From contig CM075981.1 in the NCBI GenBank assembly GCA_038087875.1, positions 2,480,001 through 2,544,000 of the forward strand: 64,000 nucleotides of DNA, written 5' to 3'. Source of the stretch: Malacoraja senta. Lineage: Eukaryota. This document shows positions 8,564 to 62,804 of the stretch, piece by piece; position 1 is the first letter of the stretch, and the number at the start of each line of letters is the position of its first letter. The position numbers and the translations under genes were made by a program. Under the pieces are notes generated by a model. That model was given only the letters and a program-made list of their open reading frames with translations, searched no databases and had not been told where the DNA came from.

Positions 8564-9091
8564 TCACTCTATTTTCAGCCAGGTCAATACATGACATTTC
8601 CCATGATGAGCAGTGGACCAAATGCAGGTATATGTCCCGGCATCTTTCTCTTTTACCCCCAACAGGAGCAACGAGGCGTCCCGATGCAAGAACACGTTGT
8701 CATTCACGAACTTCCAGTGGTGATAAGATCCCTGATATCCCACTGAAAACCCACTGTGATGCGGGGCAATGGCAACACCGTTTTTTTTCCATGTGACGAG
8801 GCTAGGTTCACTGTAATGCTTGGATATTTTACAGGGCAGCGTAACAGAACCACCCGGAGACACAACGACCACCTGCAGACTAATGATTAAAGGGTGATGA
8901 CCGGCATAACCTGGCTTGTCCATGCATCTTGGAAGCTGTTTATCGTTGACTTGCCGAGTCTTTCGTGCGTTCCACCCAGGCAAGTTTGCTTCCTCTCCCC
9001 ATTCTCTGGAGATCGGACCTGTTCCAGTTCCGGAGACTTGCCACACCATCTCCACAAGGACCATGAATCCTATCCATCTCTGCAGTCCCAT
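8564..9091 (-). CDS. U1: secreted single Ig V-domain preproprotein (175 aa), intact, subfamily A
   Basis: Signal-like MGLQRWIGFMVLVEMVWQVSG, propeptide ending RKTR, then V-set motifs TLPCK / W-KK / RDASLLL / DAGTYTC and a stop with no TM. A splice acceptor tttcacccacag|gaac lies 4 nt before the ATG. Confidence 0.85.
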   Translation of the reverse strand: MGLQRWIGFMVLVEMVWQVSGTGTGPISREWGEEANLPGWNARKTRQVNDKQLPRCMDKPGYAGHHPLIISLQVVVVSPGGSVTLPCKISKHYSEPSLVTWKKNGVAIAPHHSGFSVGYQGSYHHWKFVNDNVFLHRDASLLLLGVKEKDAGTYTCIWSTAHHGKCHVLTWLKIE

Positions 9092-15297: not shown

Positions 15298-15868
15298 CTA
15301 CTTTCCGTGGGACGGTCTCAGCTGAATCATTGGGAGGTTGTCCTCTAATTTCAGCCAGGCCAATACATGACATTTCCCATGATGAGCAGTGGACCAAGTG
15401 CAGGTATATGTCCCGGCATCTTTCTCTTGTACCCCCCACAGGAGCAACGAGGCGTCCCGACGCATGAACACGTTGTCAATCATGAACTTCCAGCGGGGAA
15501 TAAGTTCCCTGATATCCCACTGAAAACCAACCGTGATATGTGGCAATGGCAACACCGTTTTTTTTTCCATGTGACGAGGATAGGTTTACTGTAATGCTGT
15601 GATATTTTACAGGGCAGCGTAACAGAACCACCCGGAGATACAACGACCACCTGCAGACTAATGATTAAAGGGTGATGACCGGCATAACCTGGCTTGTCCA
15701 TGCATCTTGGAAGCTGTTCATTGTTGACTTGCCGAGGCGCCCGAGCGTTCTCCCCGGGCAAGTTTGCTTCCTCTCCCCATTTTCTGGAGATCAGACCTGT
15801 TCCAGTTCCGGAGACTTGCCACACCATCTCCATAAGGACCATGATCCTATCCATCTCTGCAGTCTCAT
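15298..15868 (-). pseudogene. U2: frameshifted copy of the Ig V preproprotein gene (subfamily A)
   Basis: Relative to U1 there is a 1-nt deletion in the signal peptide (ggattcatg>ggatcatg), 9 vs 8 A in the WKKN run, a further +1 in the C''/D region, and the TGA stop is replaced by GAC. Confidence 0.85.
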
Positions 15869-17900: not shown

Positions 17901-18060
17901 CAGCTCCGGAGTCTCCAAACAGGGTGACGGGGCCGGTCTTGTTCACATCTCCTGCCATCGCTCGCTCCTTTTATACTTACTCCCGGCTTCTCCTGACCCT
18001 CATTGCCTGCGCTCACGTACTTTCAACCAATCACTGCCTCCCACGGAGCATTGGCCGGAG
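17901..18060 (-). promoter_or_regulatory. U2 promoter + non-coding exon 1
   Basis: TATAAAAG at 17968-17975, CCAAT boxes, donor gctg|gtaacc at 17901/17900. Confidence 0.7.
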
Positions 18061-30619: not shown

Positions 30620-31132
30620 GACACACACTCACACACCCCCTCACACACACACACACACACACACCCTCACACACTCACCCCCTCACACACACACACACGC
30701 ACTCATACCCTCACACACACGCCCCCTCACACACACGCCCCCTCACACACACGCGCCCCCTCACACACACGCGCCCCCTCACACACACGCGCCCCCTCTC
30801 ACACACACGCGCCCCCTCTCACACACACGCGCCCCCTCTCACACACACAGCCCCCTCTCACACACACAGCCCCCTCTCACACACACAGCCCCCTCTCACA
30901 CACACAGCCCCCTCTCACACACACAGCCCCCTCTCACACACACAGCCCCCTCTCACACACACAGCCCCCTCTCACACACACAGCCCCCTCTCACACACAC
31001 GCCCCCTCTCACACACACGCCCCCTCTCACACACGCCCCCTCTCACACACGCCCCCTCTCACACACACGCCCCCTCTCACACACACGCCCCCTCTCACAC
31101 ACACGCCCCCTCTCACACACGCCCCCTCACCC
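30620..31132. repeat. CA-rich 17-19 bp minisatellite (cacacacagccccctctca)n
   Basis: Directly visible; its mirror is at 62805-63330. Confidence 0.95.
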
Positions 31133-32111: not shown

Positions 32112-33714
32112 CCACCCACCACGAGGCCGAGATGGCCACCACCAGGAGCAGCAACAACACCCACCGCCTCCCCGGCCAAACCCAGGCCCAGAGTCCGACT
32201 CTGACACCGAAACCGCCGCCCGCGGCTGCCGACTCTCCCCGGGCGGGGCGGGGCGGGGCGGGACAGAGTCGCTGTCGTCGACCCTCACTCACCGCCTCCC
32301 CGGCCATCCATGCTGCTGCCGTCGACGCGTATCTCTATCTACGGGCCTCCGCCAGCGACCTCGCCTCGCCTCGCCTCGTCTCCCCACCGGCCAGCAGCCA
32401 CCAACGGGCCGGAGCCGACACTCACCTCACCGGAGCTCCAGGCGCAGCACGAGGCCCACAACCAACCGCCACCAGGCGGACAGCAGCACGTGGTCTGTCC
32501 CTGCTGGGTCCTAGTGCCCCGCCCTTCCTCCCCTCTATAGGGAAGATCCATCAGTAGTGATGACTCTGCTGGGTCCTAATGCTCCACCCCCCCTGACCCC
32601 CTGTAGGGAAGGCCCATCAGTAGTGATTGAAAACCCATCAGTAGTGATGGGTCTTCCCCTTCCCCCTCTTTTCATCAGGTTACCCCGACCACACACATTA
32701 AAATTCCCCTTTTTTTTGGCCTTTTTTTTTTACAGGGGTGCCCTCCGGCAGCACTACACCCCTGGCCCTAAGAGCTATATCCAACTCTCTCTTGAAAGCA
32801 TCTAGTGAATTGGCCTCCACTGCCTTCTGTAGCAGAGAATTGCACAGATTCACAACTCTCTGGGTGACGGAGTTGGCACGTTCTCCCCATCACCGCGTGG
32901 GTTTTTCTCCAGGAGCTCCGGTTTCCTCCCACATCCCAAAGTCGCGCAAGGTTGTAGGTTGACAGGCCCTCTGTAAATTGCCCCTCGTGTGTAGGTGAGG
33001 GTTGGAATCTGGGGAGAACTGATGGGAATGTTGGGGAAATGAGTGAGGGTCAGGTATGCACTGTCTCCCTGCTGTGTAGCCCCATCACTCTTTGGACTAT
33101 CTCTGATCGGACTTCACCTCGCACAGAACGTTAACCCTTTCATCCTGTATCTGTACACTGTGGGCGGCTCAATTGTAATCATGTGTAGTCGTTCCGCTGA
33201 CAGGATAGCAATAATAAACTAAACTAAACTAAACTAGAAACTTTTTAAAAAGACATACTTTAGATATTGTTTTTGATCTGATGTGTAGACATCCTTCCTG
33301 GTTGTGAGAAATCTAAGATGATCTTTCTGTTACAGACTGCGCTCGACAAACAACCCGGAACTTCCACCACCGATTGTCCATCACAAAGATAATTGTTGCT
33401 GTTAAAACAATAAAATAAAGTCATAATTTCAAGCATATAACAGCGTAGTTTGTGTCTGTTCATGTGCATCACTTCCAGGATCAGAATTAGGCCATTTGCC
33501 CCATCAAGTCTACTCCTCCGTTCAATCATGGCTGATCTGTCTCTCCCTCTCAACCCCATTCTCCTGCCTTCTCCCCATAACCTCTGACATCCGTACTAAT
33601 CAAGAATCTGTCAATCTCCGCTTTAAAAATACCCAATGACTTGGCCTCCACAGCCGTCTGTGGCAATGAATTCCACAGATTCACCACCCTCTGACTAAGC
33701 AAATTCCTCCTCAT

Positions 33715-34590
33715 CTCATAGAAACATAGAAACAAAGAAAATAGGTGCAGGAGGAGGCCATTCAGCCCTTCGAGCCAGCACTGCCATTCATTGTGATCAT
33801 GGCTGATCGTTCCCAATCAATAACCCATGCCTGCCTTCTCCCCATATCCCTTGATTCCACTAGCCCCTAGAGCTCTATCTAACTCTCTCTTAAATCCATC
33901 CAGTGACTTGGCCTCCACTGCCCTCTGTGGCAGGGAATTCCACAAATTCACAACTCTCTGGGTGAAAAAGTTTTTTCTCACCTCAGTCTTAAATGGCTTC
34001 CCCTTTATTCTAAGTCTGTGGCCCCCGGTTCTGGACTCGCCCAACATTGGGAACATTTTTCCGGCATCTAGCTTGTCCAGTCCTTTTATAATTTTATATG
34101 TTTCTGTTAGAATCCCCCTCATCCTTCTAAACTCCAGTGAATACAAGCCTAGTCTTTTCAATCTTACCTCCTATGACAGTCCCGCCATCCCAGGGATCAA
34201 TCTTGTGAACCTACGCTGCACTGCCTCAATCACAAGGATGTCTTTCCTCAAATGAGGAGACCAAAACTGGACACAATACTCCAGATGTGGTCTCACCAGA
34301 GCCCTAAACAACTGCAGAAGAACCTCTTTACTCCTATACTGAAATCCTCTTGTTATGAAGGTCAACATTCCATTAGCTTTCTTCACTGCCTGCTGTACCT
34401 ACACGCCAACTTTCAGTGACCGGTGTACAAGGACGCCCAGGTCTTGCTGCATCTCCCCCTTACCTAACCTAACCCCATTGAGATAATAATCTGCCCCCTT
34501 GTTTTAGTTGCCAAAGTGGATAACCTCACATTTATCTATATTATATTGCATCTGCCACGCATCTGCCCACTCACTCAACCTGTCCTGCTC
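33715..34590 (-). mobile_element. CR1 3' fragment (mirror at ~59660-60545, +)
   Basis: ORFs 33817-34161 and 34171-34386 are CR1 ORF2 C-terminal pieces. Confidence 0.9.
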
Positions 34591-36479
34591 ACATCTCCTT
34601 CCTAAAGGTACTTCCTTTTATTCTGAGGATGTGCCCTCTGGTCCTGGACTCCGTAAATAATGGAATCATCCTCTCCACATCCACTCTGTCCAGGCCTTTA
34701 ACTATTCGGTAAGTTTCAATGCGGTCCCCACCCCCTCATCCTTCAAAATTCCCCTCATCCTGATAAACAGTTTATCAATTAAAGTCAGCAATTTCAGTTG
34801 CTATGGATTGAATTAAATAACTGCTATTAGCCAAGTATGTATACATACAAGAAGTCCCTTGGTGCTTTGCTCGCAAGTCACAACACGATATACAGTTAAC
34901 AATTAGGAATGAAACATTACAATTTAACCATGTGAAGAATGACATAAAATACCAGAGCACAAGGAGGCTGCAGACTTCTGGTTGTTGAGTAGAGCTACTG
35001 CTCGTGGTTATGTCTGGTTCTGGCGGCTTTGACAGTCCGGAGTCGCCTTCCAGAGGGAAGGAACACATCAGTATGAATGTCACAGTCACATGCAGTTACT
35101 TACCTTTCAAGCTTTGCACAATCTTGTTTTCAGAGAGACACAGACCCGTTGTGTCCATGCCATCCATCAGCCATCCATTTACACTAATCCTACACTAATC
35201 TAGTCCAACTTTATTCTCTCTATATGGTTTTCAATTTCTCCCAGATTCCATCATTCACCTGCGGACAGGTTAAACTAATCTCCTCTGCCTGCATGTGATC
35301 CATATCCCTCCATCCATGTGCCAATATAATAGCCTCTTAAACACCACCATCGTGTCTGCCTCAACCACCACCCCTGGCAGCGCGTTCCAGGCTCCCACCA
35401 CCCACTGTGTATCCGCACAACTTTGCCCCTCTCACCTTAAAGATGTGCCCTCTAGTCCTTTACATTCCCACCCTGGGAAACTTGTTCTGATGATCTACTC
35501 GAACTGTCTGTCTGACGTCCTCTAGTAATTGGTATTTCTCTTCTGGTGAAAAGGTTCTGGCCGTTGTCACGGGTAGTCAGCACCCGTAGTCAGGATCGAA
35601 CCCGGGTCTCTGGCACTGTGAGGCAGCAACTCTACGTCTATGCTACCACTGTGCCACCCCAATACAAACTGGTGTCAAACAAACATTGTCGTTCACAGAG
35701 TGGTGCCCAGACTTGTCTCTGTGTGGTTGCTAGTCAGCTGCCGTTAATTACTAACGAGATTGTGGTCATCAAAGATGTCCCAACAGTTGACAACGTGCCC
35801 CACACATCCTTGTTGTGGCTCCAGCGAGTTACAGAACCATAGAAACATAGAAAATAGGTGGAGTAGTAGGTCATTTGGCCCTTCGAGCCAGCACCGCCAT
35901 TCAATATGATTATGGCTGATCATCCAAAATCAGTACCCCGTTCCTGCTTTCTCCCCATATCCCTTGATTCCATTAGCCCTAAGAGCTAAATCTAACTCTC
36001 TCTTGAAAACATCCAGTGAATTGGCCTCCACTGCCCTCTGTGGCAGAGAATTCCACAGATTCACAACTCTTTGGGTGACATTTTTTTTCCTCATCTCAGT
36101 CCTAAATGGCCTACCCCCATATTCTTAAACTGTGACCCTGGTTCTGAACTCCCCTTCGGAAGCCTTTGATAAAGTGCCACACGTGAGGCTGTTAAGGAAA
36201 ATGAGTGCCCACGGTATTAAAAAAATACAAAAATAGGTGGAGTCTGTGCAGGAGGACTTGGACAGGTTGGGAGAGGGGGCAGTGAGGGGGGGGGGGACCT
36301 CACTGAAACATACAGAATTGTGAAAGTCTTGGATAGAGTGGATGTGGGGAGGATGTTTCCACTGGTGGGAAAGTCTAGGACTAGAGGTCATAGCCTCAGA
36401 ATTAAAGGACGTTTTTGTAGGAAGGAGATGATGCTGTGATAGGATGAATGCATGGTCAAGGGACAGTAGCTATAGACAA

Positions 36480-37050
36480 ACAATAGACAATAGACAATAG
36501 GTGCAGGAGTAGGCCATTTGGCCCTTCGAGCCAGCATCGCCATTCAATATGATCATGGCTGCTCATCCCCAATCAGTACCCCGTTCCTGCCTTCTCCCCA
36601 TATCCCCTGACTCCGCTATTTTTAAGAACTCTATCTAGCTCTCTCTTGAAAGCATCCAGAGAACCGGCCTCCACCACCCTCTGACGCAGAGAATTCCACA
36701 GACTCACCAGTCTCTGTGAGAAAAAGTGTTTCCTCATCTCCGTTCTAAATTGCTTACTCCTTATTCTTAAACTGTGGCCCCTGGTTCTGGACTCCCCCAA
36801 CATCGGGAACATGTTTCCTGCCTCTAGCGTGTCCAAACCCTTAACAATCTTATATGTTTCAATGAGATCCTCCCATCCTTCTAAACTCCAGAGTGTACAA
36901 GCCCAGCCGCTCCATTCTCTCAGCATATGACAGTCCCGCCATCCCGGGAATTAACCTTGTAAACCTACGCTGCACTCCCTCAATAGCAAGAATGTCCTTC
37001 CACAAATTAGGGGACCAAAACTGTACACAATACTCCAGGTGTGGTCTCAG
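36480..37050 (-). mobile_element. CR1 3' fragment (mirror at ~57175-57750, +)
   Basis: CR1 C-terminal peptide and (ctattgt)n tail. Confidence 0.9.
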
Positions 37051-37222
37051 GTCAGGGGCAAGGTCAGGGGCAAGTCAGCACAACCACCCCATAATGTCTG
37101 TCATTGTAAACGTGACACACTTAGGTCAACACCAAATTTAGGAACAGCATTTTATTTTGTAGTCACTGAAATCATCATGCTCCTGTCCCTTGGAAGGGCT
37201 TGTGTTGAATCAGTGGGAGGTT

Positions 37223-37787
37223 TCACTGCACTGTCAGCTTGGTGTTCAGTTTACACGGCTCGTTATTAACCAGCCAAGCGCACAAATATTTCCCAGCATC
37301 TTCCTCTTCCAGCCCCGTCAGGACCAACGAGGCGTCCCGTGTCTCATCCACTTTTGTTTTCATGAATTTCCAGCGTCCGGGTGACCCTGGATATTGCGCA
37401 CCGTTCCTGTCAGTAAACACGGCGATCGTATCTTTTCCTTTCGTCCACAGCACCACAAATTTATCGGCTCCACCGTCTTCTTTGGGCATTTTGCAGGATA
37501 GCTGAGCAGAACTCGAAGGGCCGAATGGCCTACTCCTGCACCTATTTTCTATGTTTCTAACCACCCTTACTGGCCGTCACCTCCGTCCATCTCATCTTCT
37601 CTGGAGCGAGGTTAACACCGCATTGTGGAGTTGGATCTTCATTGACTTGCCGAGACGCCCGTGCGTTCCACCCGGGCAAGTTTGCTTCCTCTCCCCATTC
37701 TCTGGAGATCAGACCTGTTCCAGTTCCGGAGACTTGCCACACCATCTCCACAAGGACCATGAATCCTATCCATCTCTGCAGTCCCAT
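37223..37787 (-). pseudogene. U3: Ig V preproprotein gene (subfamily B) disrupted by a 49-nt CR1-tail insertion
   Basis: The prepro (RASR) and V domain (SAQLSCK...WTKG...RDASLVL...DAGKYLC) are intact on either side of the insertion at 37510-37558, which creates a TAG stop. Confidence 0.88.
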
Positions 37788-38366
37788 GTTCCTGTGGGTG
37801 AAACAATGGGTCACCTTATTGCAACTCAGTAGGATTCATGATGACATTCCCTGAACCCGCCCAGAGTTGGGGAATCAAGAACCAGAGGACATCAGTTTAA
37901 GGTGAGGGGGGGAAAGATTTAATGGGAAACTGAGGGGTGACTTTTTTACACAAAGGGTGGAGGTTGTTTGGAACGAGCTGCCGGGAGAGGTAGTTGAGGC
38001 AGGTACTATCACAATGATTAAGAAACAGTTAGACAGGTACATTGATAGGACAAGATTAGAGGGGTAAGGGCCAAAAGCAGGCAGGTGGAACTAGTTTTGA
38101 TGGGACAAGTTGGTGGGCGAGGGCAAGTTGGGCCAAAGGTTTCGCTGTATGACTCTATGACTCCATCACTTGTCCCACCCCGGTCATTCCTCCTTCTCCC
38201 TGGTCCTGTCTAGCAGAAGGTACAGAAGCTTGAAAGCTCACACCACCAGACTCAGGAACAGCTTCTTCCCCTCTGCTATCAGGCTTCTGAACTGGGGGAA
38301 CAGTGAACAGAGACAATCCCACCCCCATCACTCACAGACACTTGAAGGATCCACAGGGGTGGTTAC

Positions 38367-38525
38367 CAGCTCCGGAGTCTCAACACAGGGTGACGGGGCC
38401 GGTCTTGTTCACATCTCCTGCCATCGCTCGCTCCTTTTATACCTACTCCCGGCTTCTCCTGACCCTCATTGCCTGCGCTCACGTACTTTCAACCAATCAC
38501 TGCCTCCCACGGAGCGTTGGCCGGA
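38367..38525 (-). promoter_or_regulatory. U3 promoter + non-coding exon 1
   Basis: TATAAAAG at 38434-38441; donor at 38367/38366. Confidence 0.7.
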
Positions 38526-38799
38526 GTCAGCCACGACCTCTCCACCCTCTGCCAAACGTGTCCTTGCATCAGCCGTTAACGTTTAACAAGAACAACGCCA
38601 TCCCAGCTGCCAGCGGCCAACCAGGCGGCCACACATAGCACTGGAAGGCAGCAACACTCCCGCTGCGCCACTGTGCCGCCCTTGCATTGGCCTCTTGCAC
38701 AAGTTATAAAAGTATGAGGTCCAGATAGGGTAGACAGTCAGAACCAATTTTCCATGGTGAAAATGCCAAGGACGTCAGGGTGAAAAAGGAAAAAAATTA

Positions 38800-40865: not shown

Positions 40866-41381
40866 TCACTTCACTGCAAGCTTGATATTTAGTCTACATT
40901 CCCCTTGGCTAGTGAACCAAGCGCAGGAATATATCCCAATATCACTCTCTTGTACACCCATGATTACCAACGAGGCATCCCGTGTCCCAGCCACATCTGT
41001 TTTCATGAACTCCCAGCGGCTGACACCCCCTGGATAGGTTGCACCTTTCCCTACAGTAAACACGCCCAGTGTCCCCTTCCCTTTAGTCCAGCTGACCACA
41101 AAATGCGTGGGTCCAGCCTTCCCTGTGGGTACTTTACAGGGTAGCGTAGCAGAACCACCCTTGCGTGCCGTCATCTCCGTCCATTTCGTCTTTTTCACAG
41201 TTGGATTAACACCGCATTCTGGAGTTTCTTGTTTGTTGACTTGTCGAGGCTCCCGTGCGTTCCACCCGGGCAAGTTTGCTTCCTCTCCCCATTCCCTGGA
41301 GATCGGACCTGTTCCAGTTCCGGAGACTTGCCACACCATCTCCACAAGGACCATGAATCCTATCCATCTCTGCAGTCCCAT
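40866..41381 (-). CDS. U4: secreted single Ig V-domain preproprotein (171 aa), intact, subfamily B
   Basis: Same signal and propeptide (REPR), V motifs ATLPCK / VSWTK / RDASLVI / DIGIYSC, then a stop. Acceptor cccacag|gaac precedes the ATG. Confidence 0.85.
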   Translation of the reverse strand: MGLQRWIGFMVLVEMVWQVSGTGTGPISREWGEEANLPGWNAREPRQVNKQETPECGVNPTVKKTKWTEMTARKGGSATLPCKVPTGKAGPTHFVVSWTKGKGTLGVFTVGKGATYPGGVSRWEFMKTDVAGTRDASLVIMGVQESDIGIYSCAWFTSQGECRLNIKLAVK

Positions 41382-41435
41382 GTTCCTGTGGGTGAAACAA
41401 TGGGTCACCTTATTGCAACTCAGTAGGATTCATGA

Positions 41436-42933
41436 ATCTTTAGATTCTGGAGTAGTTCCTGAGGATTGGAAGGTAGCAAACGTAACCCCACTTTTTAAGA
41501 AGGGAGGGAGAGAGAAAACGGGGAATTACAGACCAGTTAGTCTAACATCGGTAGTGGGGAAACTGCTAGAGTCACTTATTAAAGATGGGATAGCAGCACA
41601 TTTGGAAAGTGGTGAAATCATTGGACAAAGTCAGCATGGATTTACGAAAGGTAAATCATGTCTGCCGAATCTTATAGAATTTTTCGAGGATGTAACTAGT
41701 AGAGTGGATAGGGGAGGACCAGTGGATGTGTTGTATCTGGACTTTCAGAAGGCTTTCGACAAGATACCACATAAGAGATTAGTATACAAACTTAAAGCAC
41801 ACGATATTGGGGGTTCAGTATTGATGTGGATAGGGAACTGGCTGGCAGACAGGAAGCAAAGAGTAGGAGTAAACGGGTCCTTTTCACAATGGCAGGCAGT
41901 GACTAGTGGGGTACCGCAAGGCTCAGTGCTGGGACCCCAGCTATTTACAATTTATATTAATGAACTGGATGAGGGAATTGAAGGCAACATCTCCAAGTTT
42001 GCGGATGACACTAAGCTGGGGGGCAGTGTTAGCTGTGAGGAGGATGCTAGGAGACTGCAAGGTGACTTGGATAGGCTGGGTGAGTGGGCAAATGTTTGGC
42101 AGATGCAGTATAATGTGGATAAATGTGAGGTTATCCACTTTGGTGGCAAAAACAGGAAAGCAGACTATTATCTAAATGGTGGCCGATTAGGAAATGGGGA
42201 GATGCAGCGAGACCTGGGTGTCATGGTACACCAGTCATTGAAAGTAGGCATGCAGGTGCAGCAGGCAGTGAAGAAAGCGAATGGTATGTTAGCTTTCATA
42301 GCAAAAGGATTTGAGTATAGGAGCAGGGAGGTTCTACTGCAGTTGTACAGGGTCTTGGTGAGACCACACCTAGAGTATTGCGTACAGTTTTGGTCTCCAA
42401 ATCTGAGGAAGGACATTATAGCCATAGAGGGAGTGCAGAGAAGGTTCACCAGACTGATTCCTGGGATGTCAGGACTTTCATATGCAGAAAGACTGGATAG
42501 ACTTGGCTTATACTCGCTAGAATTTAGGAGATTGAGAGGGGATCTTATAGAAACGTACAACATTTTTATGGGGTTGGACAGGCTAGATGCAAGAAGATTG
42601 TTCCCGATGTTGGGGAAGTCCAGGACAAGGGGTCACAGCTTAAGGATAAGGGTGAAATCCTTTAAGACCGAGATGAGGAAAAACTTTTTCACACAGAGAG
42701 TGGTGAATCTCTGGAACTCTCTGCCACAGAGGGTAGTTGAGGCCAGTTCATTGGCTATATTTAAGAGGGAGTTAGATGTGGCCCTTGTGGCTAAGGGGAT
42801 CAGGGGGTATGGAGAGAAGGCAGGTACAGGATACTGAGTTGGATGATCAGCCATGATCATATTGAATGGCGGTGCAGGCTCGAAGGGCCGAATGGCCTAC
42901 TCCTGCACCTATTTTCTATGTATCTATGTATCT
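41436..42933 (+). mobile_element. 5'-truncated young CR1 LINE in the U4 intron; RT frame open to its stop at 42837
   Basis: Uninterrupted RT C-terminal frame ([25 protein letters not shown]), (tatctatg)n tail, and apparent TSD atga. Confidence 0.95.
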
Positions 42934-43505
42934 ATGATGACATTCTCTGAAGCTGCTGCCACCACACTGGGCAATGTCGCTGTGCAGCTTCTTCAGTTCC
43001 CGCCTGGTTTATTTTAAGTTGCTTTGACCTGTCATGGACCAACAACATTGAAGTGGCAGCCAAGGAGGCACACCGATGCATCTACTTCCCCGGAGATCGA
43101 GGAAATATTGCAAGTCTCCAATGTCTCTTAGAATCTTCTACAGATGCACCATGGAGTGCAGACTGTGGGGTTGCATCACAACTAGGTTTGGGAACAGCTC
43201 TGAGCCCAAGACCACAAGAAATTGCAGAGAGTTGTGGATGGAGCCCAGTCCATCACACAGAACACACTCCCCACCAGTGACTCCATCTACAACCCAAAAA
43301 ATCAAAGACTTGTCCCACCCCGGTCATTCCTCCTTCTCCCTGGTCCTGTCTAGCAGAAGGTACAGAAGCTTGAAAGCGCGCACCACCAGACTCAGGAACA
43401 GCTTCTTCCCCTCTGCTATCAGGCTTCTGAACTGCGGGAACAGTGAACAGAGACAATCCCACCCCATCACTCACAGACACTTGAAGGATCCACAGGGGTG
43501 GTTAC

Positions 43506-43665
43506 CAGCTCCAGAGTCTCCACACAGGGTGTCGGGGCCGGTCTTGTTCATATCTCCTGCCATCGCTCGCTCCTTTTATACCTACTCCCGGCTTCTCCTG
43601 ACCCTCATTGCCTGCGCTCACGTACTTTCAACCAATCACTGCCTCCCACGGAGCGTTGGCCGGAG
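43506..43665 (-). promoter_or_regulatory. U4 promoter + non-coding exon 1
   Basis: TATAAAAG at 43573-43580; donor gctg|gtaacc at 43506/43505. Confidence 0.7.
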
Positions 43666-44164
43666 TCAGCCGCGACCTCTCCACCCTCTGCCAAACGTGT
43701 CCTTGCATCAGCCGTTGACGTTTAACAAGAACGACGCCATCCCAGCTGCCAGCGGCCAACCAGGCGCCCCACACATCCTGCTTGTGTCTCCACCACGTCT
43801 GGCCCAGCCACGCCCTGGCACCTGCGCTGGTTTCACAGTTTATACTCAATATGAGCCGGCGGTGCGGTGGGATTGGTCGTAGCTGAATCCGGCCTATGCC
43901 CCGTGGGAGGCAGTGATTGGATCAATACTTCCTTCCCAACAACCATCAGGCTCTTGAACACGACACGACTCTGAGCTCAACGATGAACGTCTATAGACTG
44001 TCTTTGGTTGTACAAAGGATGTTGGCTTTACACACTATTGTATTGGGCTCTCTCATTTACTGAATCCTTTTGCTTTTTACATATTATATCCGTGTGGTTT
44101 ATTGTGTAAAAGGCTCCTCAACACAGGACACTTTCCAGTCATGGTTTTCCTTCCTTTTCCCCAG

Positions 44165-44298: not shown

Positions 44299-46539
44299 TT
44301 CAATTATTATTTGCATCCCAAGTTTAACAGGTCTGAGCAGCAAAGTTGTGTCATGGAGTTGCCTTTAGCTGAGTTGAGTCGAGTTGACTTGAGTTGACTT
44401 GAGTTTACTTTAGATTTGTTTAGAGCGATCGCCCGTACACAAGTTCTAACCTACACACAAGGGACAATTTACTGAAGCCAATTAACCTACAAACCTGCAC
44501 ATCTTCGAAATCTGTCAGGAAACTGTAGCACCCGGAGGAAACCCACACGGTCATAGGGACAACTTACAACCTCCGTACAGACAGTACCCACAGTCAGCAT
44601 TGAACCCGGGTCTCTGGCGCTGTAAGGCAGCAACTCTACTGCTGCATCACTGAGCCTCCCTTACATTGGCCTCTTGCACTGTTGGGGCTGCTGATTAGAG
44701 TCCAGTTTTGATCCTCATTGGGAGTGTGCAGAAACATAGAAACATAGAAAATTGGTGCAGGAGTAAGCCATTCGGCCCTTCGAGCCAGCACCGCCATTCA
44801 ATATGATCATCGCTGAACATCCTAAATCAGTACCCCGTTCCTGCTTTCTCCCCATATCCCTTGATTCCGTTAGCACTAAGAGCTAAATCTAACTCTCTCT
44901 TGAGAACATCCAGTGAATTGGCCTCCACTACCTTCTGTGGCAGAGAATTCCACAGATTCACAACTCTCTGGGTGAAAAGGTTTTATTCATCTCAGTCCTA
45001 AATGGCCGACCCCTTATTCTTAAACTGTGACCCCTTGGTTCCCCCAACATCGGGAACATTTTTCCTGCATCTATCTAGTCTGTCCAATCCTTTAAGAATT
45101 TTATATGTTTTTATAAGTTCCAGTCTCATCCTAAATTCCAGTGAATACAAGCAGTCGAGCCATTCTTTCATCATATGTCAGTCCCGCCATCCTGGGAATT
45201 AACCTGGTGAACCTACGTTGCACTCCTTCAATAGCAAGAATGCCCTTCCTCAAAATGACAGTGGAGGGCTGCCACTACAGAGACATCCAATAGACCTGAT
45301 AGAATGATATAGAATTATGAGAGGCGTAGATAGCGGAATTAACCAGAAGCAATTTCCCAAAAGCTTTTCCCAAAGGAGAGGGTTCAGAAGCGGTTTCCCA
45401 AAATGATGCCGGGATTGGAGGTTGTTAGTTATAAAGACAGGTTGGATAGTCTCGGATTGTATTCTCTAGAACTTCAGATGTTGAGGGGAGACCTGACAGA
45501 AGGTTATAAAATTATGAGAGCCAGATAGGGGAGACAGTCAGAACCAATTTCGCAGGGTGGAAATGCCAAAGACTAGAGGGCATCGCTTTAGGGTAGGATG
45601 CTTTCAAGAGAGAGTTAGATAGAGCTCTTAAAGATAGCGGAGTCAAGGGATATGGGGAGAAGGCAGGAATGGGGTACCGATTGTGGATGATCAGCCATGA
45701 TCACAGTGAATGGCGGTGCTGGCTCGAAGGGCCGAATGGGCAACTACTGCGCATATTATTTATTGTCTATTGTCTATTGTCTATTGAGATAGGAAAAATG
45801 TTAAGATGGGCGGGTCACAGAGGGTATTGGGTGCCTGGAACCCGCTGCTGTGGGTGGTGGTGGCAGATACAATAGTTAAGAGTCTTTATCTAAAAAATCT
45901 CATGAATATGCAGGGAATGGAGGATTATGGATCACAGAGGAGATTAGCTTAACATGGCATCATGTTCAGCACGGACCTTGTGGGCCGAAGGGCCTGTTCC
46001 TGTGCTGTACTGTTCCATGTTCTATGTTACATAGTCTTCTCAATCACATCTTGAGAAGAACATTTTCCAGAGGTGCCCTGGTACCACCAGTGGGACATTC
46101 ATTGTACCTGCTGCAGCCAATGAGTGTGTTGTGTATACAGCCAGAGGAGAAGAGGAGATTTATGTGGAGTTTCATTTTGTAATCATTATTTATTTAATGT
46201 CATAGTGTAATAGAGTCATAGTGATACAGCGTGGAAACAGGCCCTTCGGCCCAACTTGCCCACACTGGCCAACATGTCCCAGCTACACTAGTCCCACCTG
46301 TTGGCCATATCCCTCCAAATCTGACCTATACCTGTTCCTGCCTAACTGTTTCTTAAACGTTGGGATAGTTTCTGCCTCAACTGCGATGGTTGACCAGAGC
46401 CAGACGTGGTGGAGACACAAGCAGGATGTGTGGGGCGCCTGGTTGGCCGCTGGCAGCTGGGATGACGTTGTTCTTGTTAAACGTTAACAGCTGATGCAAG
46501 GACACGTTTGGCAGAGGGTGGAGAGGTCGTGGCTGACTC

Positions 46540-46696
46540 CGGCCATTGCTCCGTGGGAGGCAGTGATTGGTTGAAAGTACATGAGCGCAGCCAATGAGGG
46601 TCAGGAGAAGCCGGGAGTAGGTATAAAAGGAGCGAGCGATGGCAGGAGATGTGAACAAGACCGGCCCCGTCACCCTGTGTGGAGACTCCGGAGCTG
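46540..46696 (+). promoter_or_regulatory. U5 promoter + non-coding exon 1
   Basis: gattgg, ccaat (46591), TATAAAAG at 46622-46629, donor gctg|gtaacc at 46696/46697, intron 46697-47271. Confidence 0.75.
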
Positions 46697-47275
46697 GTAA
46701 CCACCCCTGTGGATCCTTCAAGTGTCTGTGAGTGATGGGGGTGGGATTGTCTCTGTTCACTGTTCCCGCAGTTCAGAAGCCTGATAGCAGAGGGGAAGAA
46801 GCTGTTCCTGAGTCTGGTGGTGTGAGCTTTCAAGCTTCTGTACCTTCTGCCAGACAGGACCAGGGAGAAGGAGGAATGACCGGGGTGGGACAAGTGATGG
46901 AGTCATAGAGACATACAGCGAGACCTTTGGCCCAACTTGCCCGCGCCCACCAACTTGTCCCATCAAATCTAGTTCCACCTGCCTGCTTTTGGCTCTTACC
47001 CCTCTAATCCTGTCCTATCAATGTACCTGTCTAACTGTTTCTTAATCATTGTGATAGTACCTGCCTCAACTACCACTTCCGGCAGCTCGTTCCAAACAAC
47101 CTCCACCCTTTGTGTAAAAAAGTCACCCCTCAGTTTCCAATTAAATCTTTCCTCCCCTCACCTTAAACCGATGTCCTCTGATTCTCGATTCCCCAACTCT
47201 GGGCGGGTTCAGGGAATGTCATCATGAATCCTACTGAGTTGCAATAAGGTGACCCATTGTTTCAACCACAGGAAC

Positions 47276-47806
47276 ATGGGATTGCAGAGATGGATAGAAT
47301 TCATGGTCCTTGTGGAGATGGTGTGGCAAGTCTCCGGAACGAGAACAGGTCCGATCTCCAGAAAATGGGGAGAGGAAGCAAACTTGCACGGGTGGAACGC
47401 ACGGGCACCTCGGCAAGTCAACGATAAACAGCTTCCAAGATGCATGCACAAGCCAGGTTCTGACAGTGATCACCTTCCATCGATTTGCGAGCATTTGTTC
47501 TTTGCATCTCCGGGTGAATCTTTTACGCTGCCCTGTAAAATATCCGCGGATTACAAACAACCCTCGTTACTTCAGTGGAAAAAAAACGGTGTTCCCATTG
47601 CCAATTTTGATGATAAAACGTTTCAGAAATATATGGGATCTGATGTCAGCTGGAAATTCGTGGATCCAGAAGCCCTTTGGGGGAAACGGGACGGCTCGTT
47701 GCTCCTGACAGGCATAAAAGAGAAAGATGAGGGGATATATTCATGTGTTTGGTTCATTGATTCTCATGCGGTATGTGAAGAATTTGCCCGGCTGACAATC
47801 AAGTGA
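47276..47806 (+). CDS. U5: secreted single Ig V-domain preproprotein (176 aa), intact, subfamily A
   Basis: Signal plus propeptide (RAPR), FTLPCK / QWKK / RDGSLLL / DEGIYSC, then a stop. Acceptor caaccacag|gaac precedes the ATG. Confidence 0.85.
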   Translation: MGLQRWIEFMVLVEMVWQVSGTRTGPISRKWGEEANLHGWNARAPRQVNDKQLPRCMHKPGSDSDHLPSICEHLFFASPGESFTLPCKISADYKQPSLLQWKKNGVPIANFDDKTFQKYMGSDVSWKFVDPEALWGKRDGSLLLTGIKEKDEGIYSCVWFIDSHAVCEEFARLTIK

Positions 47807-49287
47807 AACCTCCCACTGATTCAGCAAGGCCCGTCCCAGGGTCAGTAGCAAAGTCTAGTCTAGTTTAGTTTAGTTCAAAGGTACAGCAGGGAAACAGGCC
47901 CTTCGGCCCACAGAGCCAACGGGGACCAGTGATCACCCCATACACTAGTTCTATCCCACACACTGGGTACAATTTACACTGTCTCTGGGATGTGGGACGT
48001 ACAAACTCAGTACAGACATCACCCGGGGAATAGAGAAGGTGAATGCACAGTTTTTTGCCCAGAGTGTGGGAATCAAGAACCAGGGGACATAAGTTTAACG
48101 TTAGAGGGGCAAATTTTTGAAAGGAACCTGTGGGGCAACTTTTTCACTCGGGGGGGGGGGGAGGGTATGGAACGAGCTGCCAGAGGAGGTAGTTGAGGCA
48201 GGTACTACAACGACATAATGGACACTTGGGTAGGTCGATGGATAGGAATGGTTTTATGGGGATATGGGCCAAATGTAACGAAATAGGACTACCTTAGATG
48301 GGGTATATGGGTCTTCATGGGCAATGTAGATTGGCTATTTCCTACTAGCCAATTATAGTGGTTGATAGTAGTGACTCCGCCTAATATGCGGTTTATATTA
48401 TCAAGAGCTTGCCTACGCTAGTTAGTACTAGTAGCTGCTAGGAACTGTAATGTCCTGCAGATTTATGCTGCGAGTAGATTTAATAAACATGTGTTGATCT
48501 TGATATGTGTTCGACTCAGCTCATTACATGGTGTCAGAGAGTGAATCTTGCCCACCATGTCATGTTTATCGGGTTTAAAAAATATATATAGTTTATGTGT
48601 CTACTATATCCATCATGGCAAATTCTTGTCGCCTTCCTAGTCCTCTGATCTTTGACTCTGACATTGCTGAAATGCTGGCGTCTTATCGAGCGTGATTACA
48701 CTCATTATGCTCGCATCGTTCATCGCAACGACCCCCCCCCACCCCGATGTGCGTGCTTCTGTATTGTTCAACTTAGCTGGACCTGAAGCTATGAATCGTG
48801 CCGACAATTTCACATTTGAGCCTGCTGTTCTGGATGCTAATGGTCAGGTCCTGGTGCCTGCTGAGACGATTGACGACCCTGCTGTCTTATTTGCAAAGTT
48901 GATACTGGCGCAAAATGCAATGTCATCTCGTTATCAGAGTTTAAAAAAAATTGTTATGCTGAATGTATTGAAAAGGCCTCGGCCAAGCTTCAGGCTTATG
49001 AGGGGGATGTTCTACACCCTCTTGGACAAACTGATTTAAAGTGCACCATAGACGAGCAGACTCGTACCTTAAAGTTTTATAGTGTTAAGGGGGATTCAGA
49101 GACTTTGCTCGGTATCAATGCATGCCTCGATCTAGTCCTGGTATACTTTGGCTGCGCCGTCCATCAACACTTTCTCGCTGATGGACCCACTCAACAGGTA
49201 CTCTCTCAATACAAAGATCTGTTTAACGACAAGCTTGGCAAGTTGCTTATCATACACCACATTGTTGTCGATCCCAACGTAACCATA

Positions 49288-54452: not shown

Positions 54453-55914
54453 GATGGTCTCAGACCCGACCCACAAGTGATGGTCTCAGACCCGACCCAT
54501 CAAAAACTGCACCTATCAACGAAATGCCGGTTCCTGCTGACGTCGTGAGCCTACAAAGGTTCCTTGGAATGGTCAACTACCGGGGGAAATCTATTCCCAA
54601 CCTCAGCGACATATCTGCCCCCCTGCGGGAACTGACACACAAAGACGTTGCATGGTCCTGGTATCCGCAGCACCAAAGAGCTTTTGATGCTCTCAAATTG
54701 CAGCTGGCTCGTGCACCTACTCTCGCCTATTTTGCTTTGGAGTTACCAGTAACGCTCACCTGCGATGCGTCCCAGTATGGACTTGGCGCAGCATGCCTGC
54801 AGTCCACTCCCGATGGCGACTGCAAGCCCGTTTCTTACGCCTCTCGCACAGTAACTGACACTGAACAACGTTACGCTCACATCGAAAAAGAATTGCTCGC
54901 AGTGGTTTTCGCCTGGAAAGTCTGTGACTAGAGAAACTGACCACCAGCCGCTGGTCACTATTTTGAACAAACCCATCCACGCTGCCTCAGCACGACTACA
55001 GCGAATGATGATGCAACTGCAGCGATTTGATTTCAACATGGTCTATAAGAAATGCAAGGACATGCACATAGCTGATACGCTATCAAGAGCCCCACGCAAA
55101 ACCAACAAACAACAACTCTCTGAACAGGACCAGTTCTCAGTAAGGAAGGTATCGTATGTTCCTACTGATTGCCTGAGCAGCCTAGTAGAAAACACGGCTG
55201 CTGATGAGACTTTACAATTGCTGTCTGCAGTCATCCGGCGTGGCTGGCCGGATAAACAACACAACACCCCCGCTCGCAACCCGCCCATACTTCCTGGTTC
55301 ACGTGCAGGCAGTGGAGATTAGTTTAAGTTGGCATCATGTTCAGCATGGACCTTGTGGGCCGAAGGGCCTGTTCCTGTGCTGTACTGTTCCATGTTCTAT
55401 GTTACATAGTCTTCTCAATCACATCTTGAGAAGAACATTTTCCAGAGGTGCCCTGGTACCACCAGTGTGACATTCATTGTACCTGCTGCAGCCAATGAGT
55501 GTGTTGTGTATACAGCCAGAGGAGAAGAGGAGATTTATGTGGAGTTTCATTTTGTAATCATTATTTATTTAATGTCATAGTGTAATAGAGTCATAGTGAT
55601 ACAGCGTGGAAACAGGCCCTTCAGCCCAACTTGCCCACACTGGCCAACATGTCCCAGCTACACTAATCCCACCTGTTGGTCCATATCCCTCCAAATCTGA
55701 CCTATACCTGTTCCTGTCTAACTGTTTCTTAAACGTTGGGATAGTTTCTGCCTCAACTGCGATGGTTGACCAGAGCCAGACGTGGTGGAGACACAAGCAG
55801 GATGTGTGGGGCGCCTGGTTGGCCGCTGGCAGCTGGGATGGCGTTGTTCTTGTTAAACGTTAACGGCTGATGCAAGGACACGTTTGGCAGAGGGTGGAGA
55901 GGTCGCGGCTGACT

Positions 55915-56072
55915 CCGGCCAATGCTCCGTGGGAGGCAGTGATTGGTTGAAAGTACGGGAGCGCAGGCAATGAGGGTCAGGAGAAGCCGGGAGTAGGTAT
56001 AAAAGGAGCAAGCGATGGCAGGAGATGTGAACAAGACCGGCCCCGTCACCCTGTGTGGAGACTCCGGAGCTG
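55915..56072 (+). promoter_or_regulatory. U6 promoter + non-coding exon 1
   Basis: ggccaatg, gattgg, TATAAAAG at 55998-56005, donor at 56072/56073, intron 56073-56431. Confidence 0.72.
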
Positions 56073-56435
56073 GTAACCACCCCCTGTGGATCCTTCAAGT
56101 GTCTGTGAGTGATGGGGGTGGGATTGTCTCTGTTCACTGTTCCCCCAGTTCAGAAGCCTGATAGCAGAGGGGAAGAAGCTGTTCCTGAGTCTGGTGGTGT
56201 GAGCTTTCAAGCTTCTGTACCTTCTGCTAGACAGGACCAGGGAGAAGGAGGAATGACCGGGGTGGGACAAGTGATGGAGTCCTAGAGTCATACAGCGAGA
56301 CCTTCGGCCCAACTTGCCCGCGCCCACCAAATGTCCTCTGGTTCTCGATTCCCCAACTCTGGGCGGGTTCAGGGAATGTCATCATGAATCCTACTGAGTT
56401 GCAATAAGGTGACCCATTGTTTCACCCACAGGAAC

Positions 56436-57000
56436 ATGGGACTGCAGAGATGGATAGGATTCATGGTCCTTGTGGAGATGGTGTGGCAAGTCTCCGGAAC
56501 TGGAACAGGTCCGATCTCCAGAGAATGGGGAGAGGAAGCAAACTTGCCCGGGTGGAACGCACGGGCGCCTCGGCAAGTCAATGAAGATCCAACTCCACAA
56601 TGCGGTGTTAACCTCGCTCCAGAGAAGATGAGATGGACGGAGGTGACGGCCAGTAAGGGTGGTTAGAAACATAGAAAATAGGTGCAGGAGTAGGCCATTC
56701 GGCCCTTCGAGTTCTGCTCAGCTATCCTGCAAAATGCCCAAAGAAGACGGTGGAGCCGATAAATTTGTGGTGCTGTGGATGAAAGGAAAAGATACGATGG
56801 CCGTGTTTACTGACAGGAACGGTGCGCAATATCCAGGGTCACCCGGACGCTGGAAGTTCATGAAAACAAACGTGGATGAGACACGGGACGCCTCGTTGGT
56901 CCTGACGGGGCTGGAAGAGGAAGATGCTGGGAAATATTCCTGCGCTTGGCTGGTTAATAACGTGCCGTGTAAACTGAACACCAAGCTGACAGTGCAGTGA
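56436..57000 (+). pseudogene. U6: Ig V preproprotein gene (subfamily B) with the same 49-nt CR1-tail insertion as U3
   Basis: The insertion at 56665-56713 creates a TAG; the remaining frame is intact to the TGA at 57000. Confidence 0.88.
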
Positions 57001-62334: not shown

Positions 62335-62804
62335 NNNNNNNNNNNNNNNNNNNNNNNNNNNNNNNNNNNNNNNNNNNNNNNNNNNNNNNNNNNNNNNNNN
62401 NNNNNNNNNNNNNNNNNNNNNNNNNNNNNNNNNNNNNNNNNNNNNNNNNNNNNNNNNNNNNNNNNNNNNNNNNNNNNNNNNNNNNNNNNNNNNNNNNNNN
62501 NNNNNNNNNNNNNNNNNNNNNNNNNNNNNNNNNNNNNNNNNNNNNNNNNNNNNNNNNNNNNNNNNNNNNNNNNNNNNNNNNNNNNNNNNNNNNNNNNNNN
62601 NNNNNNNNNNNNNNNNNNNNNNNNNNNNNNNNNNNNNNNNNNNNNNNNNNNNNNNNNNNNNNNNNNNNNNNNNNNNNNNNNNNNNNNNNNNNNNNNNNNN
62701 NNNNNNNNNNNNNNNNNNNNNNNNNNNNNNNNNNNNNNNNNNNNNNNNNNNNNNNNNNNNNNNNNNNNNNNNNNNNNNNNNNNNNNNNNNNNNNNNNNNN
62801 NNNN
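62335..62804. other. Assembly gap (N run)
   Basis: Ns, at the position equivalent to the left-arm gap. Confidence 1.

What the first reader, a model, noticed from the sequence alone, without database searches (positions are those of the whole stretch)
47459..47806. V domains show codon-level signature of strong diversifying selection
Seen (hand alignment of U1 vs U5): framework codons are identical even at synonymous sites (tct ccg ggt; acg ctg ccc tgt aaa ata tcc; tgg aaa aaa aac ggt gtt; tcg ttg ctc ctg; aaa gag aaa gat). Loop and strand-edge codons differ by multi-base non-synonymous changes: BC loop KHYSE/ADYKQ, C'-C'' PHHSGFSVG/NFDDKTFQK, FG STAHHGK/FIDSHAV. The V domains are about 49% identical by hand count, against 54/61 residues in the preceding region. 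Inference: dN is much greater than dS at CDR-like positions, suggesting an arms race with variable ligands.
Basis: partly seen in the sequence, partly recalled or inferred. Interest (0 to 1): 0.8.

Follow-up and report, generated by a model that had tools for sequence, protein, structure and literature searches.

The report
Fast-evolving loops in skate V-domain genes

Summary
U1 (8564-9091, minus) and U5 (47276-47806, plus) are 54/61 identical in the first 61 residues and 49/99 in the V domain, and the quoted codons and loop strings are there.

I aligned 15 codon sequences: window copies plus relatives fetched from Leucoraja erinacea and Rhinoraja longicauda. I wrote my own codon-model code and checked it against IQ-TREE.
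- M1a vs M2a gives LRT 39.6; M7 vs M8 gives 37.3.
- About 31% of codons sit at omega about 2.7, and 18% at omega 0.04.
- Sites with P>0.95 lie 8/30 in the BC, C'C'', DE and FG loops against 1/69 elsewhere.
- In five independent close pairs these loops show 59 replacement to 6 silent changes (p=0.008).

Whole-V omega for U1/U5 is 1.4-1.9 (p=0.055). The contrast with the preceding region comes mostly from concerted evolution of a shared 5' cassette, while the V subfamilies are older than the species splits.

The family is an unstudied nectin-type, single-V, apparently secreted family, found in skates and one electric ray. The arms-race idea is untested. The scan had already flagged the same family on neighbouring DNA (s1-140104, s1-140147).

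The parts
47276..47806 (+). U5 gene body: one ORF of 176 codons plus a TGA stop. Residues 1-21 are a signal-like helix, 22-69 a disordered pro/linker region with a conserved RxPR-Q motif and Cys56, and 70-176 the V domain.
   Evidence: ORF and translation. AlphaFold model: helix 4-17, pLDDT under 50 for most of residues 1-69 (segments 1-3, 10-39, 41-54, 57-69) and block means of 73-91 from about residue 70 to 176. The Gnomon models of the Leucoraja relatives use the same single coding exon and the same stop.
47483..47803 (+). U5 V-set domain, nectin/PVR type. This is the stretch with the excess of replacement changes. Top loops are BC (residues 88-97), C'C'' (113-115), DE (129-141) and FG (161-165).
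   Evidence: Pfam V-set scores 28.0 bits against a cut-off of 26. Strands come from DSSP on the model. Foldseek top hits are nectin-1/2/3/4 D1, PVR D1, TIGIT and CAR D1. Site posteriors. U5 branch omega 2.75.
46399..47424 (+). 5' cassette of U5. By homology to the Gnomon models it holds the promoter region, an upstream exon and intron, and then the leader and first ~50 codons. It is 93-97% identical among all copies, and homology between subfamilies collapses at about 47424.
   Evidence: Self-BLAST, alignment, identity profiles, species-specific shared substitutions. Contig breaks at 47415-47444 in public runs.
8564..9091 (-). Its orthologue is Leucoraja LOC129708937.
   Evidence: U1 vs Le_A gives V dS 0.11 and dN 0.11.
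15340..15868 (-). U2: pseudogene copy of U1 with three 1-nt indels and a lost stop. An RT-bearing retroelement fragment (15911-17369) splits its 5' cassette from the ORF.
37223..37787 (-). U3: its ORF is broken by a 49-nt SINE-fragment insert at 37511-37559. Without the insert it matches Leucoraja LOC129708945 closely, with about 95% amino-acid identity in V.
40866..41381 (-). U4: intact 171-codon paralogue of the other subfamily clade, the one nearest the Narcine homologue.
56436..57000 (+). U6: inverted near-copy of U3 with the same 49-nt insert (56664-56712).

Best explanation
U5 is one member of a tandem family, so far seen only in batoids, of small and probably secreted proteins. Each consists of a signal peptide, a disordered pro/linker segment and one nectin/PVR-type Ig V domain.

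In the V domain the structural core evolves under strong constraint. This core is the Cys-Trp-Cys triad, the RDxSL motif and the DxGxYxC motif. About a third of codons accumulate amino-acid replacements roughly 2.7 times faster than silent changes. These codons lie mainly in the BC, C'C'', DE and FG loops at one end of the domain. I read this as positive diversifying selection on a binding surface, acting repeatedly after gene duplication. It is strongest in the derived clade that holds U1 and U5.

The sharp step from a near-identical preceding region to a 49%-identical V domain has a separate cause. The promoter-to-propeptide cassette is kept alike among paralogues within each species by gene conversion, while the V exons escape it and form subfamilies older than the species splits.

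What is shown: the gene structure, the fold, the substitution statistics and the concerted 5' cassette. What is inferred: secretion, that the loops bind something, and that ligand variability drives the selection.
For: - Family and architecture.
- My codon likelihood code reproduces IQ-TREE GY+F3X4 (lnL -2693.729 vs -2693.728).
- M0 omega is 1.19.
- M1a/M2a LRT 39.6, p=2.5e-9, with omega2 2.72 in 31% of sites and omega0 0.04 in 18%.
- M7/M8 LRT 37.3 and M8a/M8 37.8.
- 17 simulations under M1a gave LRTs of at most 14.0.
- Each half of the domain with its own tree gives LRT 14.7 and 32.3; clade II alone gives 23.6.
- Five phylogenetically independent close pairs: top loops 59.3 N to 5.7 S (pN/pS 2.85, binomial p=0.008), strands 0.74, bottom loops 1.23. 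Fisher top vs rest p=0.004.
- Sites with P>0.95: 8/30 in top loops vs 1/69 elsewhere, p=2.4e-4.
- U5 terminal branch omega 2.75, p=0.04.
- Silent divergence of orthologous V exons (0.03-0.14) matches flank divergence of 6-9%, so dS is not depressed.
- The PHI-like test gives no recombination signal overall or in clade II.
- Only 2 sites are shared-derived between U1 and U5, against 81 where U1 agrees with its Leucoraja orthologue.
- Concerted 5' cassette. Trans-species V subfamilies.
Against:
- Clade I is not significant.
- Per-site FEL-like tests find only 10 positive sites at p<0.1 among 99, about twice the chance expectation.
- Half of all codons fit omega=1. Three of the six window copies are broken (U2, U3, U6), so much of the family is close to neutral drift.
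- Since their split, the pseudogene U2 and the intact U1 show the same N:S ratio (9:2 and 9:1).
- One of the 17 null simulations reached LRT 14, so the chi-square p-values are optimistic.
- The loop classes use DSSP boundaries, but I fixed them after I had seen the site posteriors.
- Multi-nucleotide mutation is not modelled.
- There is no RNA, polymorphism or ligand evidence.
Confidence: 0.62

Rival explanations
1. Relaxed constraint. The family is a birth-and-death array drifting almost neutrally. Only a few fold-determining residues are kept, and the apparent omega>1 class is statistical inflation from a small, paralogue-rich data set.
For: - M0 omega is 1.19 and 51% of sites fit omega=1.
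- U2, U3, U6 and Rhinoraja L002:1312 are broken.
- U1 and the pseudogene U2 have equal N:S ratios.
- Clade I LRT is only 4.2.
- One null simulation reached LRT 14.
- Per-site tests are weak.
Against: - The neutral models M1a and M8a are rejected by LRTs of 38-40, far above all 17 null replicates.
- Top loops in independent close pairs carry 59 N to 6 S, where neutrality predicts about 51 to 14 (p=0.008).
- Intact ORFs, invariant cysteines and a class of sites at omega 0.04 persist across three genera and an electric ray.
Confidence: 0.22
2. A mutational or mosaic origin. Loop segments are overwritten by short gene-conversion tracts from other (partly unsampled) paralogues, or are hit by multi-nucleotide mutations. 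This gives clustered multi-base differences next to untouched framework codons without selection for novelty.
For: - 13 of 21 changed top-loop codons between U1 and U5 differ at 2-3 bases.
- The 5' cassette shows that gene conversion is active in this cluster.
- U5's flanks match the Leucoraja B genes at orthologue level (5' 95-98%, 3' 87-90%), but its V exon is only 57-78% identical, an island of divergence.
- U5 changes place between the left-half and right-half trees.
- Clade I gives a weak PHI-like signal (p=0.02-0.06).
Against: - There is no recombination signal in the whole V alignment or in clade II (p=0.49-0.99).
- Only 2 sites are shared-derived between U1 and U5.
- Conversion from paralogues would bring in silent and replacement differences alike, so it would not by itself raise omega above the donors' value.
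- In close pairs, multi-base codons are about as frequent in top loops (13/51) as in strands (13/70).
- The FG loop of U5 has no match in any sampled paralogue.
Confidence: 0.12
3. An alignment or assembly artefact. Loop columns next to indels are misaligned, or collapsed paralogues in the assembly create false differences.
For: Several high-omega columns lie next to indels (columns 96-97, 136, 170). The cluster is repeat-rich and has two N runs.
Against: - Clade II has almost no indels and still gives LRT 23.6.
- Close pairs with unambiguous alignment show the same pattern.
- The U5 V exon is reproduced without any difference in contigs of two public runs, though these may come from the assembled individual and so may not be independent.
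- Orthologues from two other assemblies recover the same subfamilies.
Confidence: 0.04

Closest known systems
Nectin / PVR (necl-5) / TIGIT / CAR group of V-set domains
   Same: These are the best structural matches to the U5 model. Nectin-1 D1 5b21_A gives E 2e-9; nectin-1 IgV 6lsa_A gives TM by target 0.81 and rmsd 2.0 A; PVR D1, TIGIT and CAR D1 also match. NCBI names the Narcine homologue 'nectin-1-like'.
   Different: Sequence identity is only 13-25%. This family has a single V domain, no C-type domains, no transmembrane segment and no tail, and the ORF stops right after the G strand. It has an extra conserved cysteine pair (linker Cys56 and G-strand Cys167) and a tandem, fast-evolving gene array. 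From memory, nectins bind through the GFCC'C'' sheet; whether this family does was not tested.
CEACAM / PSG N-domains (fast-evolving IgV-like domains, some of them secreted)
   Same: They are a tandem IgSF family with rapid evolution of an N-terminal V-like domain and with secreted members. [quoted passage not shown] PMC3628338 also covers its divergence.
   Different: From memory, CEACAM N-domains lack the canonical intradomain disulfide, which is kept here (C87-C157). No sequence relationship was found, and a pathogen link is not shown for the skate family.
Conotoxin, snake-venom PLA2 and defensin genes, which pair a conserved signal/pro region with a hypervariable mature peptide (from memory)
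   Same: The leader and pro region, with its flanking non-coding DNA, is near-identical among paralogues, while the mature part diverges with dN above dS.
   Different: Here the conserved cassette carries species-specific changes shared by all paralogues. That points to gene conversion rather than to recent duplication alone. The mature part is a folded Ig domain, not a short peptide.
VCBPs of amphioxus and Ciona, and teleost NITR/SITR (germline-diversified V-domain immune proteins; SITR paper PMC3031540 listed)
   Same: These are non-rearranging V domains diversified in the germline. VCBP and SITR are secreted.
   Different: From memory, VCBPs have two V domains plus a chitin-binding domain. 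Here there is one V domain and no chitin-binding domain. The only chitin link is that GH18/CBM14 chitinase genes are interspersed with the V genes in both skates. No homology to these families was detected.

Membership tests
Ig V-set domain (Pfam PF07686) | Profile score at or above Pfam's gathering cut-off | tested here: met
   U5 scores 28.0, U1 30.1 and U4 39.1 bits against a cut-off of 26.
Ig V-set domain (Pfam PF07686) | Canonical B-strand Cys, C-strand Trp and F-strand YxC, plus the C' and C'' strands | tested here: met
   C87, W101, Y155 and C157 are invariant in 12 sequences. DSSP on the model shows strands C' 106-112 and C'' 116-119.
Nectin / nectin-like (PVR) family | V-C-C ectodomain, transmembrane segment and cytoplasmic tail | tested here: not met
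   The ORF ends at a stop 10 residues after the G-strand Cys in all intact copies and in the Gnomon models. There are no further Ig domains and no hydrophobic tail.
Nectin / nectin-like (PVR) family | V-domain fold closest to nectin/PVR D1 | tested here: met
   The top Foldseek hits in PDB and Swiss-Prot models are nectin-1/2/3/4, PVR, TIGIT and CAR D1.
Nectin / nectin-like (PVR) family | PVR-family signature motifs in the C strand, C'-C'' and the FG loop (motifs recalled from memory) | tested here: inconclusive
   I inspected the alignment by eye and saw no obvious (V/I)(S/T)Q, AX6G or T(F/Y)P. The motifs are recalled from memory and were not checked against a profile.
Rearranging antigen-receptor V genes | V exon followed by a recombination signal, with the G strand (FGxG) supplied by a separate J segment | tested here: not met
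   The G strand is contiguous in the germline ORF and has no FGxG motif. The sequence after the exon is a conserved aagtgaaacctccc with no heptamer.
Genes under diversifying (positive) selection | A codon class with omega>1 preferred over nearly-neutral models | tested here: met
   M1a/M2a LRT 39.6, M7/M8 37.3, M8a/M8 37.8. The result is robust to splitting the alignment and to using clade II alone.
Genes under diversifying (positive) selection | Selected sites cluster on a candidate binding surface | tested here: met
   This was tested by loop topology only. 8/30 top-loop sites have P>0.95 against 1/69 elsewhere, p=2.4e-4. 3D distances could not be computed because no coordinates were available.
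Genes under diversifying (positive) selection | Support from polymorphism (McDonald-Kreitman test, allelic diversity) | not testable with these tools
   Only contigs of two runs of the same organism were available, and they show no variant in the V exon.
VCBP (variable region-containing chitin-binding proteins) | Two N-terminal V domains plus a C-terminal chitin-binding domain | tested here: not met
   There is a single V domain and no other Pfam domain. CBM_14 occurs only in the neighbouring chitinase gene.

The most novel reading that the evidence does not exclude
Skates and rays keep a germline-encoded repertoire of soluble, single V-domain binders. A gene-conversion-homogenised expression and secretion cassette drives many V exons whose CDR-like loops are diversified by selection. 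The genes are embedded among chitinase genes. This would be a secreted, non-rearranging recognition system working like VCBPs or soluble decoy receptors at mucosal surfaces, so far undescribed in jawed vertebrates.
Probability: 0.15. Interest if true: 0.8.

Novelty: new member of a known kind. Interest (0 to 1): 0.5.

Why it matters
Fast-evolving, tandemly duplicated Ig-superfamily genes usually mark an interface with something that also evolves, such as pathogens, gametes or conspecific signals. This family exists in public data only as "uncharacterized" or "nectin-1-like" predictions, and I found no paper on it.

If the loops are binding sites, the family would add a secreted, non-rearranging V-domain repertoire to cartilaginous-fish immunity or reproduction. 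It would also give a clean natural example of a conversion-homogenised expression cassette joined to a V exon that escapes conversion.

The phenomenon itself, dN above dS in the exposed loops of V domains, is well known, so the finding is mainly a pointer to an unstudied family.

Tried and rejected
- **Leader intron.** I considered a leader intron or a splice donor at the end of the V exon. Donor and acceptor phases do not fit in U1 (sequence). The Leucoraja Gnomon models read one exon from the start Met to the TGA. I dropped the idea.
- **U1-U5 gene conversion.** I tested whether conversion explains the identical framework codons. Only 2 sites support it, against 81 that support orthology with Le_A, so I rejected it. 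The framework codons are alike across the whole clade because dS is low.
- **NG86 dS for divergent pairs.** It is inflated by multi-hit codons (0.33 against 0.10 at four-fold sites and 0.27 by ML), so I give a range.
- **Per-site FEL-like test.** It has low power, with 10 positive sites at p<0.1.
- **RNA evidence.** No RNA run holds the gene. Read laying returned only DNA-type contigs, dominated by repeats, and showed no splicing or polymorphism in V.
- **Wider homologue searches.** The word-indexed search found only 7 skate proteins, even with a profile. The exhaustive profile search added one full-length relative, Narcine P0080; the rest were multi-Ig proteins.
- **Literature.** Searches by locus names and by topic found nothing on this family.
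- **Structure.** 3D clustering could not be computed because model coordinates are not exposed.
- **Software.** PAML and HyPhy are not installed, so I wrote the site models myself and checked only M0 against IQ-TREE.
- **Not done.** I ran no complex prediction because no binding claim is made.

Full report
**What is there**

The window is vertebrate DNA with elasmobranch-type repeats, not microbial. It holds six copies of one small gene:
- U1, 8564-9091, minus strand.
- U2, about 15340-15868, minus strand.
- U3, 37223-37787, minus strand.
- U4, 40866-41381, minus strand.
- U5, 47276-47806, plus strand. This is the copy in the finding.
- U6, 56436-57000, plus strand.

Each is one ORF. It starts with a signal-like leader (MGLQRW...), continues with a linker of about 50 residues, and ends with one Ig V domain followed directly by a TGA stop.
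- U1, U4 and U5 are intact.
- U2 has three 1-nt indels and has lost its stop.
- U3 and U6 are inverted near-copies that share a 49-nt SINE-fragment insert, which shifts the frame.

Pfam places the domain in V-set/ig. An AlphaFold model built on a 12-sequence family alignment gives a confident nine-strand V fold from about residue 70 to 176 (10-residue block pLDDT means 73-91). Residues 4-17 form a signal-like helix, and most of the rest of residues 1-69 is low-confidence, disordered chain. The best structural matches are the D1 domains of nectins, PVR/necl-5, TIGIT and CAR.

**Relatives**

Sequence searches find the family only as unnamed predictions:
- Six Leucoraja erinacea loci (LOC129708937-46) and one Rhinoraja longicauda locus.
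- One distant full-length relative, called "nectin-1-like", in the electric ray Narcine bancroftii.

The Leucoraja Gnomon models consist of a short upstream exon plus one exon that runs from the leader Met to the same stop. There is therefore no leader intron, no downstream exon and no transmembrane segment. The product is most likely secreted, which is an inference.

I fetched the DNA of these loci. That gave 15 usable coding sequences. In both skates the V genes are interspersed with GH18/CBM14 chitinase genes. Window 19.8-30.4 kb is syntenic with the Leucoraja chitinase region.

**Check of the observation**

- U1 vs U5 are 54/61 identical at the N-terminus and 49/99 in the V domain.
- The three loop strings and the quoted identical codon runs are present.
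- Of 49 codons that keep the amino acid, 42 are identical in DNA. Only 2 of 22 four-fold sites in such codons differ.
- Loop codons often differ at two or three bases.

As a class the strands are not conserved between U1 and U5: 28 of 53 strand codons change the amino acid.

**Why the preceding region is so much more alike**

About 1 kb of upstream DNA plus the first ~50 codons is 93-97% identical among all copies. Homology between subfamilies collapses at about 47424.

This cassette carries substitutions that are shared by all paralogues of one species and absent from the others. All eight Leucoraja copies read TCCGCAAC where the window and Rhinoraja copies read TCCGGAAC. The Rhinoraja copies share IAR and RVPRQG.

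The V exons behave the opposite way and group by subfamily across species:
- U1 with Le_A.
- U3/U6 with Le_D.
- U4 with Le_C and Le_F.

So the 5' cassette evolves in concert, which I attribute to gene conversion, while the V subfamilies predate the species splits. Between the two main clades, V dS is 0.5-0.8 while leader dS is 0.06-0.17. The 54/61 versus 49% contrast therefore mostly measures homogenisation of the cassette, not selection on V.

**Is dN above dS?**

PAML and HyPhy are not installed, so I wrote GY94/F3x4 site models myself. My M0 likelihood equals IQ-TREE's (-2693.729 vs -2693.728).

Site models over the V domain (99 codons, 15 sequences):
- M0 omega is 1.19.
- M2a beats M1a with LRT 39.6 (p=2.5e-9). 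It puts 18% of sites at omega 0.04, 51% at omega 1 and 31% at omega 2.7.
- M8 beats M7 (LRT 37.3) and M8a (LRT 37.8).
- Seventeen data sets simulated under M1a gave LRTs of at most 14.0. One value of 14 shows that the chi-square p-values are optimistic, but the observed value is far outside the simulated range.

Robustness:
- Each half of the domain with its own tree gives LRT 14.7 and 32.3.
- The clade containing U1 and U5 alone gives LRT 23.6. The other clade (U3, U4, U6 and their orthologues) is not significant at 4.2.
- A PHI-like permutation test finds no recombination signal in the whole alignment or in the U1/U5 clade.
- Only 2 sites look like U1-U5 conversion, against 81 that follow orthology.
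- Silent divergence of orthologous V exons (0.03-0.14) matches flank divergence of 6-9%, so a depressed dS is not the cause.

**Where the changes fall**

I took strand boundaries from DSSP on the model and the standard V-domain topology. I fixed these classes after I had seen the site posteriors.
- Sites with P(omega>1)>0.95 lie 8/30 in the top loops (BC, C'C'', DE, FG) against 1/69 elsewhere (p=2.4e-4).
- In five phylogenetically independent close pairs, the top loops carry 59.3 replacement to 5.7 silent differences (pN/pS 2.85, p=0.008). Strands give 0.74 and bottom loops 1.23.
- The FG loop has the highest mean omega, at 2.5.
- Per-site FEL-like tests are weak, with 10 positive sites at p<0.1.

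**How strong it is for the pair in the finding**

It is moderate.
- Whole-V omega for U1/U5 is 1.37 by NG86 and 1.93 by pairwise ML (p=0.055). Top-loop omega is 2.65 (p=0.07).
- The U5 terminal branch has omega 2.75 (p=0.04).
- U5 has the longest branch in a tree rooted with the Narcine protein.
- U5's flanks match the Leucoraja B genes at orthologue level, while its V exon is only 57-78% identical. I cannot fully explain this island of divergence. It leaves some room for exon replacement from an unsampled paralogue.
- Since their split, the pseudogene U2 and the intact U1 show the same N:S ratio, so recent small counts cannot separate selection from drift.

"dN much greater than dS" is too strong. 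[quoted passage not shown] is what the data show.

**Mechanism and rivals**

- Best reading (about 0.6): diversifying selection on a loop-borne binding surface of a secreted nectin-type V domain, combined with conversion-driven homogenisation of the expression and secretion cassette.
- Near-neutral birth-and-death drift with statistical inflation (about 0.2).
- Loop-targeted micro-conversion or multi-nucleotide mutation (about 0.1).
- Alignment or assembly artefact (under 0.05).

The arms-race explanation is untested. No RNA run, polymorphism or ligand information could be obtained.

**Comparison with known systems, and novelty**

- The fold is nectin/PVR-like, but the protein fails the family's architecture: it has a single V domain, no C domains and no membrane anchor.
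- It is not a rearranging V gene and not a VCBP.
- In behaviour it resembles CEACAM/PSG N-domains, and gene families with a conserved signal/pro cassette and a hypervariable mature part.
- I found no paper on the family.
- The same family and the same kind of signal were already noted by this scan on neighbouring DNA (s1-140104, s1-140147). My independent results agree with those notes.

Verdict: a real and statistically supported but moderate case of a well-known phenomenon, in an unstudied batoid gene family.

Noticed in passing
window 46399-47424 and the equivalent stretches at 8943-9944, 17371-18207, 37639-38636, 43308-43848, 55763-56336: The ~1 kb promoter-to-propeptide cassette is 93-97% identical among all paralogues. 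It carries species-specific substitutions shared by all copies of a species, which indicates concerted evolution. The tract ends about 150 nt into the ORF.
   Followed up: yes
window 37511-37559 (minus) and 56664-56712 (plus): An identical 49-nt SINE-fragment insert breaks the frame of U3 and U6. The Leucoraja orthologue LOC129708945 lacks it. The insert predates the inverted duplication that made U3 and U6.
   Followed up: partly
window 29946-37892 vs 64000-56331: A large inverted duplication of about 8 kb at about 96% identity. Its axis lies near 47.1 kb, close to U5. The two N runs (31133-32111 and 62335-62804) lie in mirrored positions.
   Followed up: no
window 15911-17369 and 41464-42934: Copies of one retroelement fragment at 93% identity. 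The ORF 41107-42837 has an RVT_1 reverse transcriptase domain (E 5e-32). The fragment sits at the same relative position, just upstream of the start codon, in both U2 and U4, and it separates the ORF from its 5' cassette.
   Followed up: partly
window about 19800-30400: This region is syntenic at about 91% with the Leucoraja GH18 (+CBM_14) chitinase genes. The V genes flank chitinase genes in both skates.
   Followed up: partly
window 47420-47482 (U5 codons 49-69) and the same codons in the other copies: The linker between the conserved cassette and the V domain is also replacement-rich. U4 vs Leucoraja C gives 12.5 N to 0.5 S, and U1/U5 omega is 2.35.
   Followed up: partly
U5 residues 56 and 167 (window 47441-47443 and 47774-47776): Two extra cysteines are invariant in all 12 aligned members and in the Narcine protein: a linker PxC and the start of the G strand. 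They probably form a disulfide that ties the linker to the V domain. A conserved RxPR-Q motif lies upstream of them.
   Followed up: no
L001:10640-11212 (Leucoraja LOC129708937): The orthologue of U1/U2 has lost the family's TGA stop and reads on for 15 residues into the conserved 3' flank.
   Followed up: no
window 47806-47981 vs L003: The 3' flank of U5 is 87-90% identical to that of the Leucoraja B genes and its 5' flank 95-98%, yet the V exon between them is only 57-78% identical. This island of divergence remains unexplained.
   Followed up: partly
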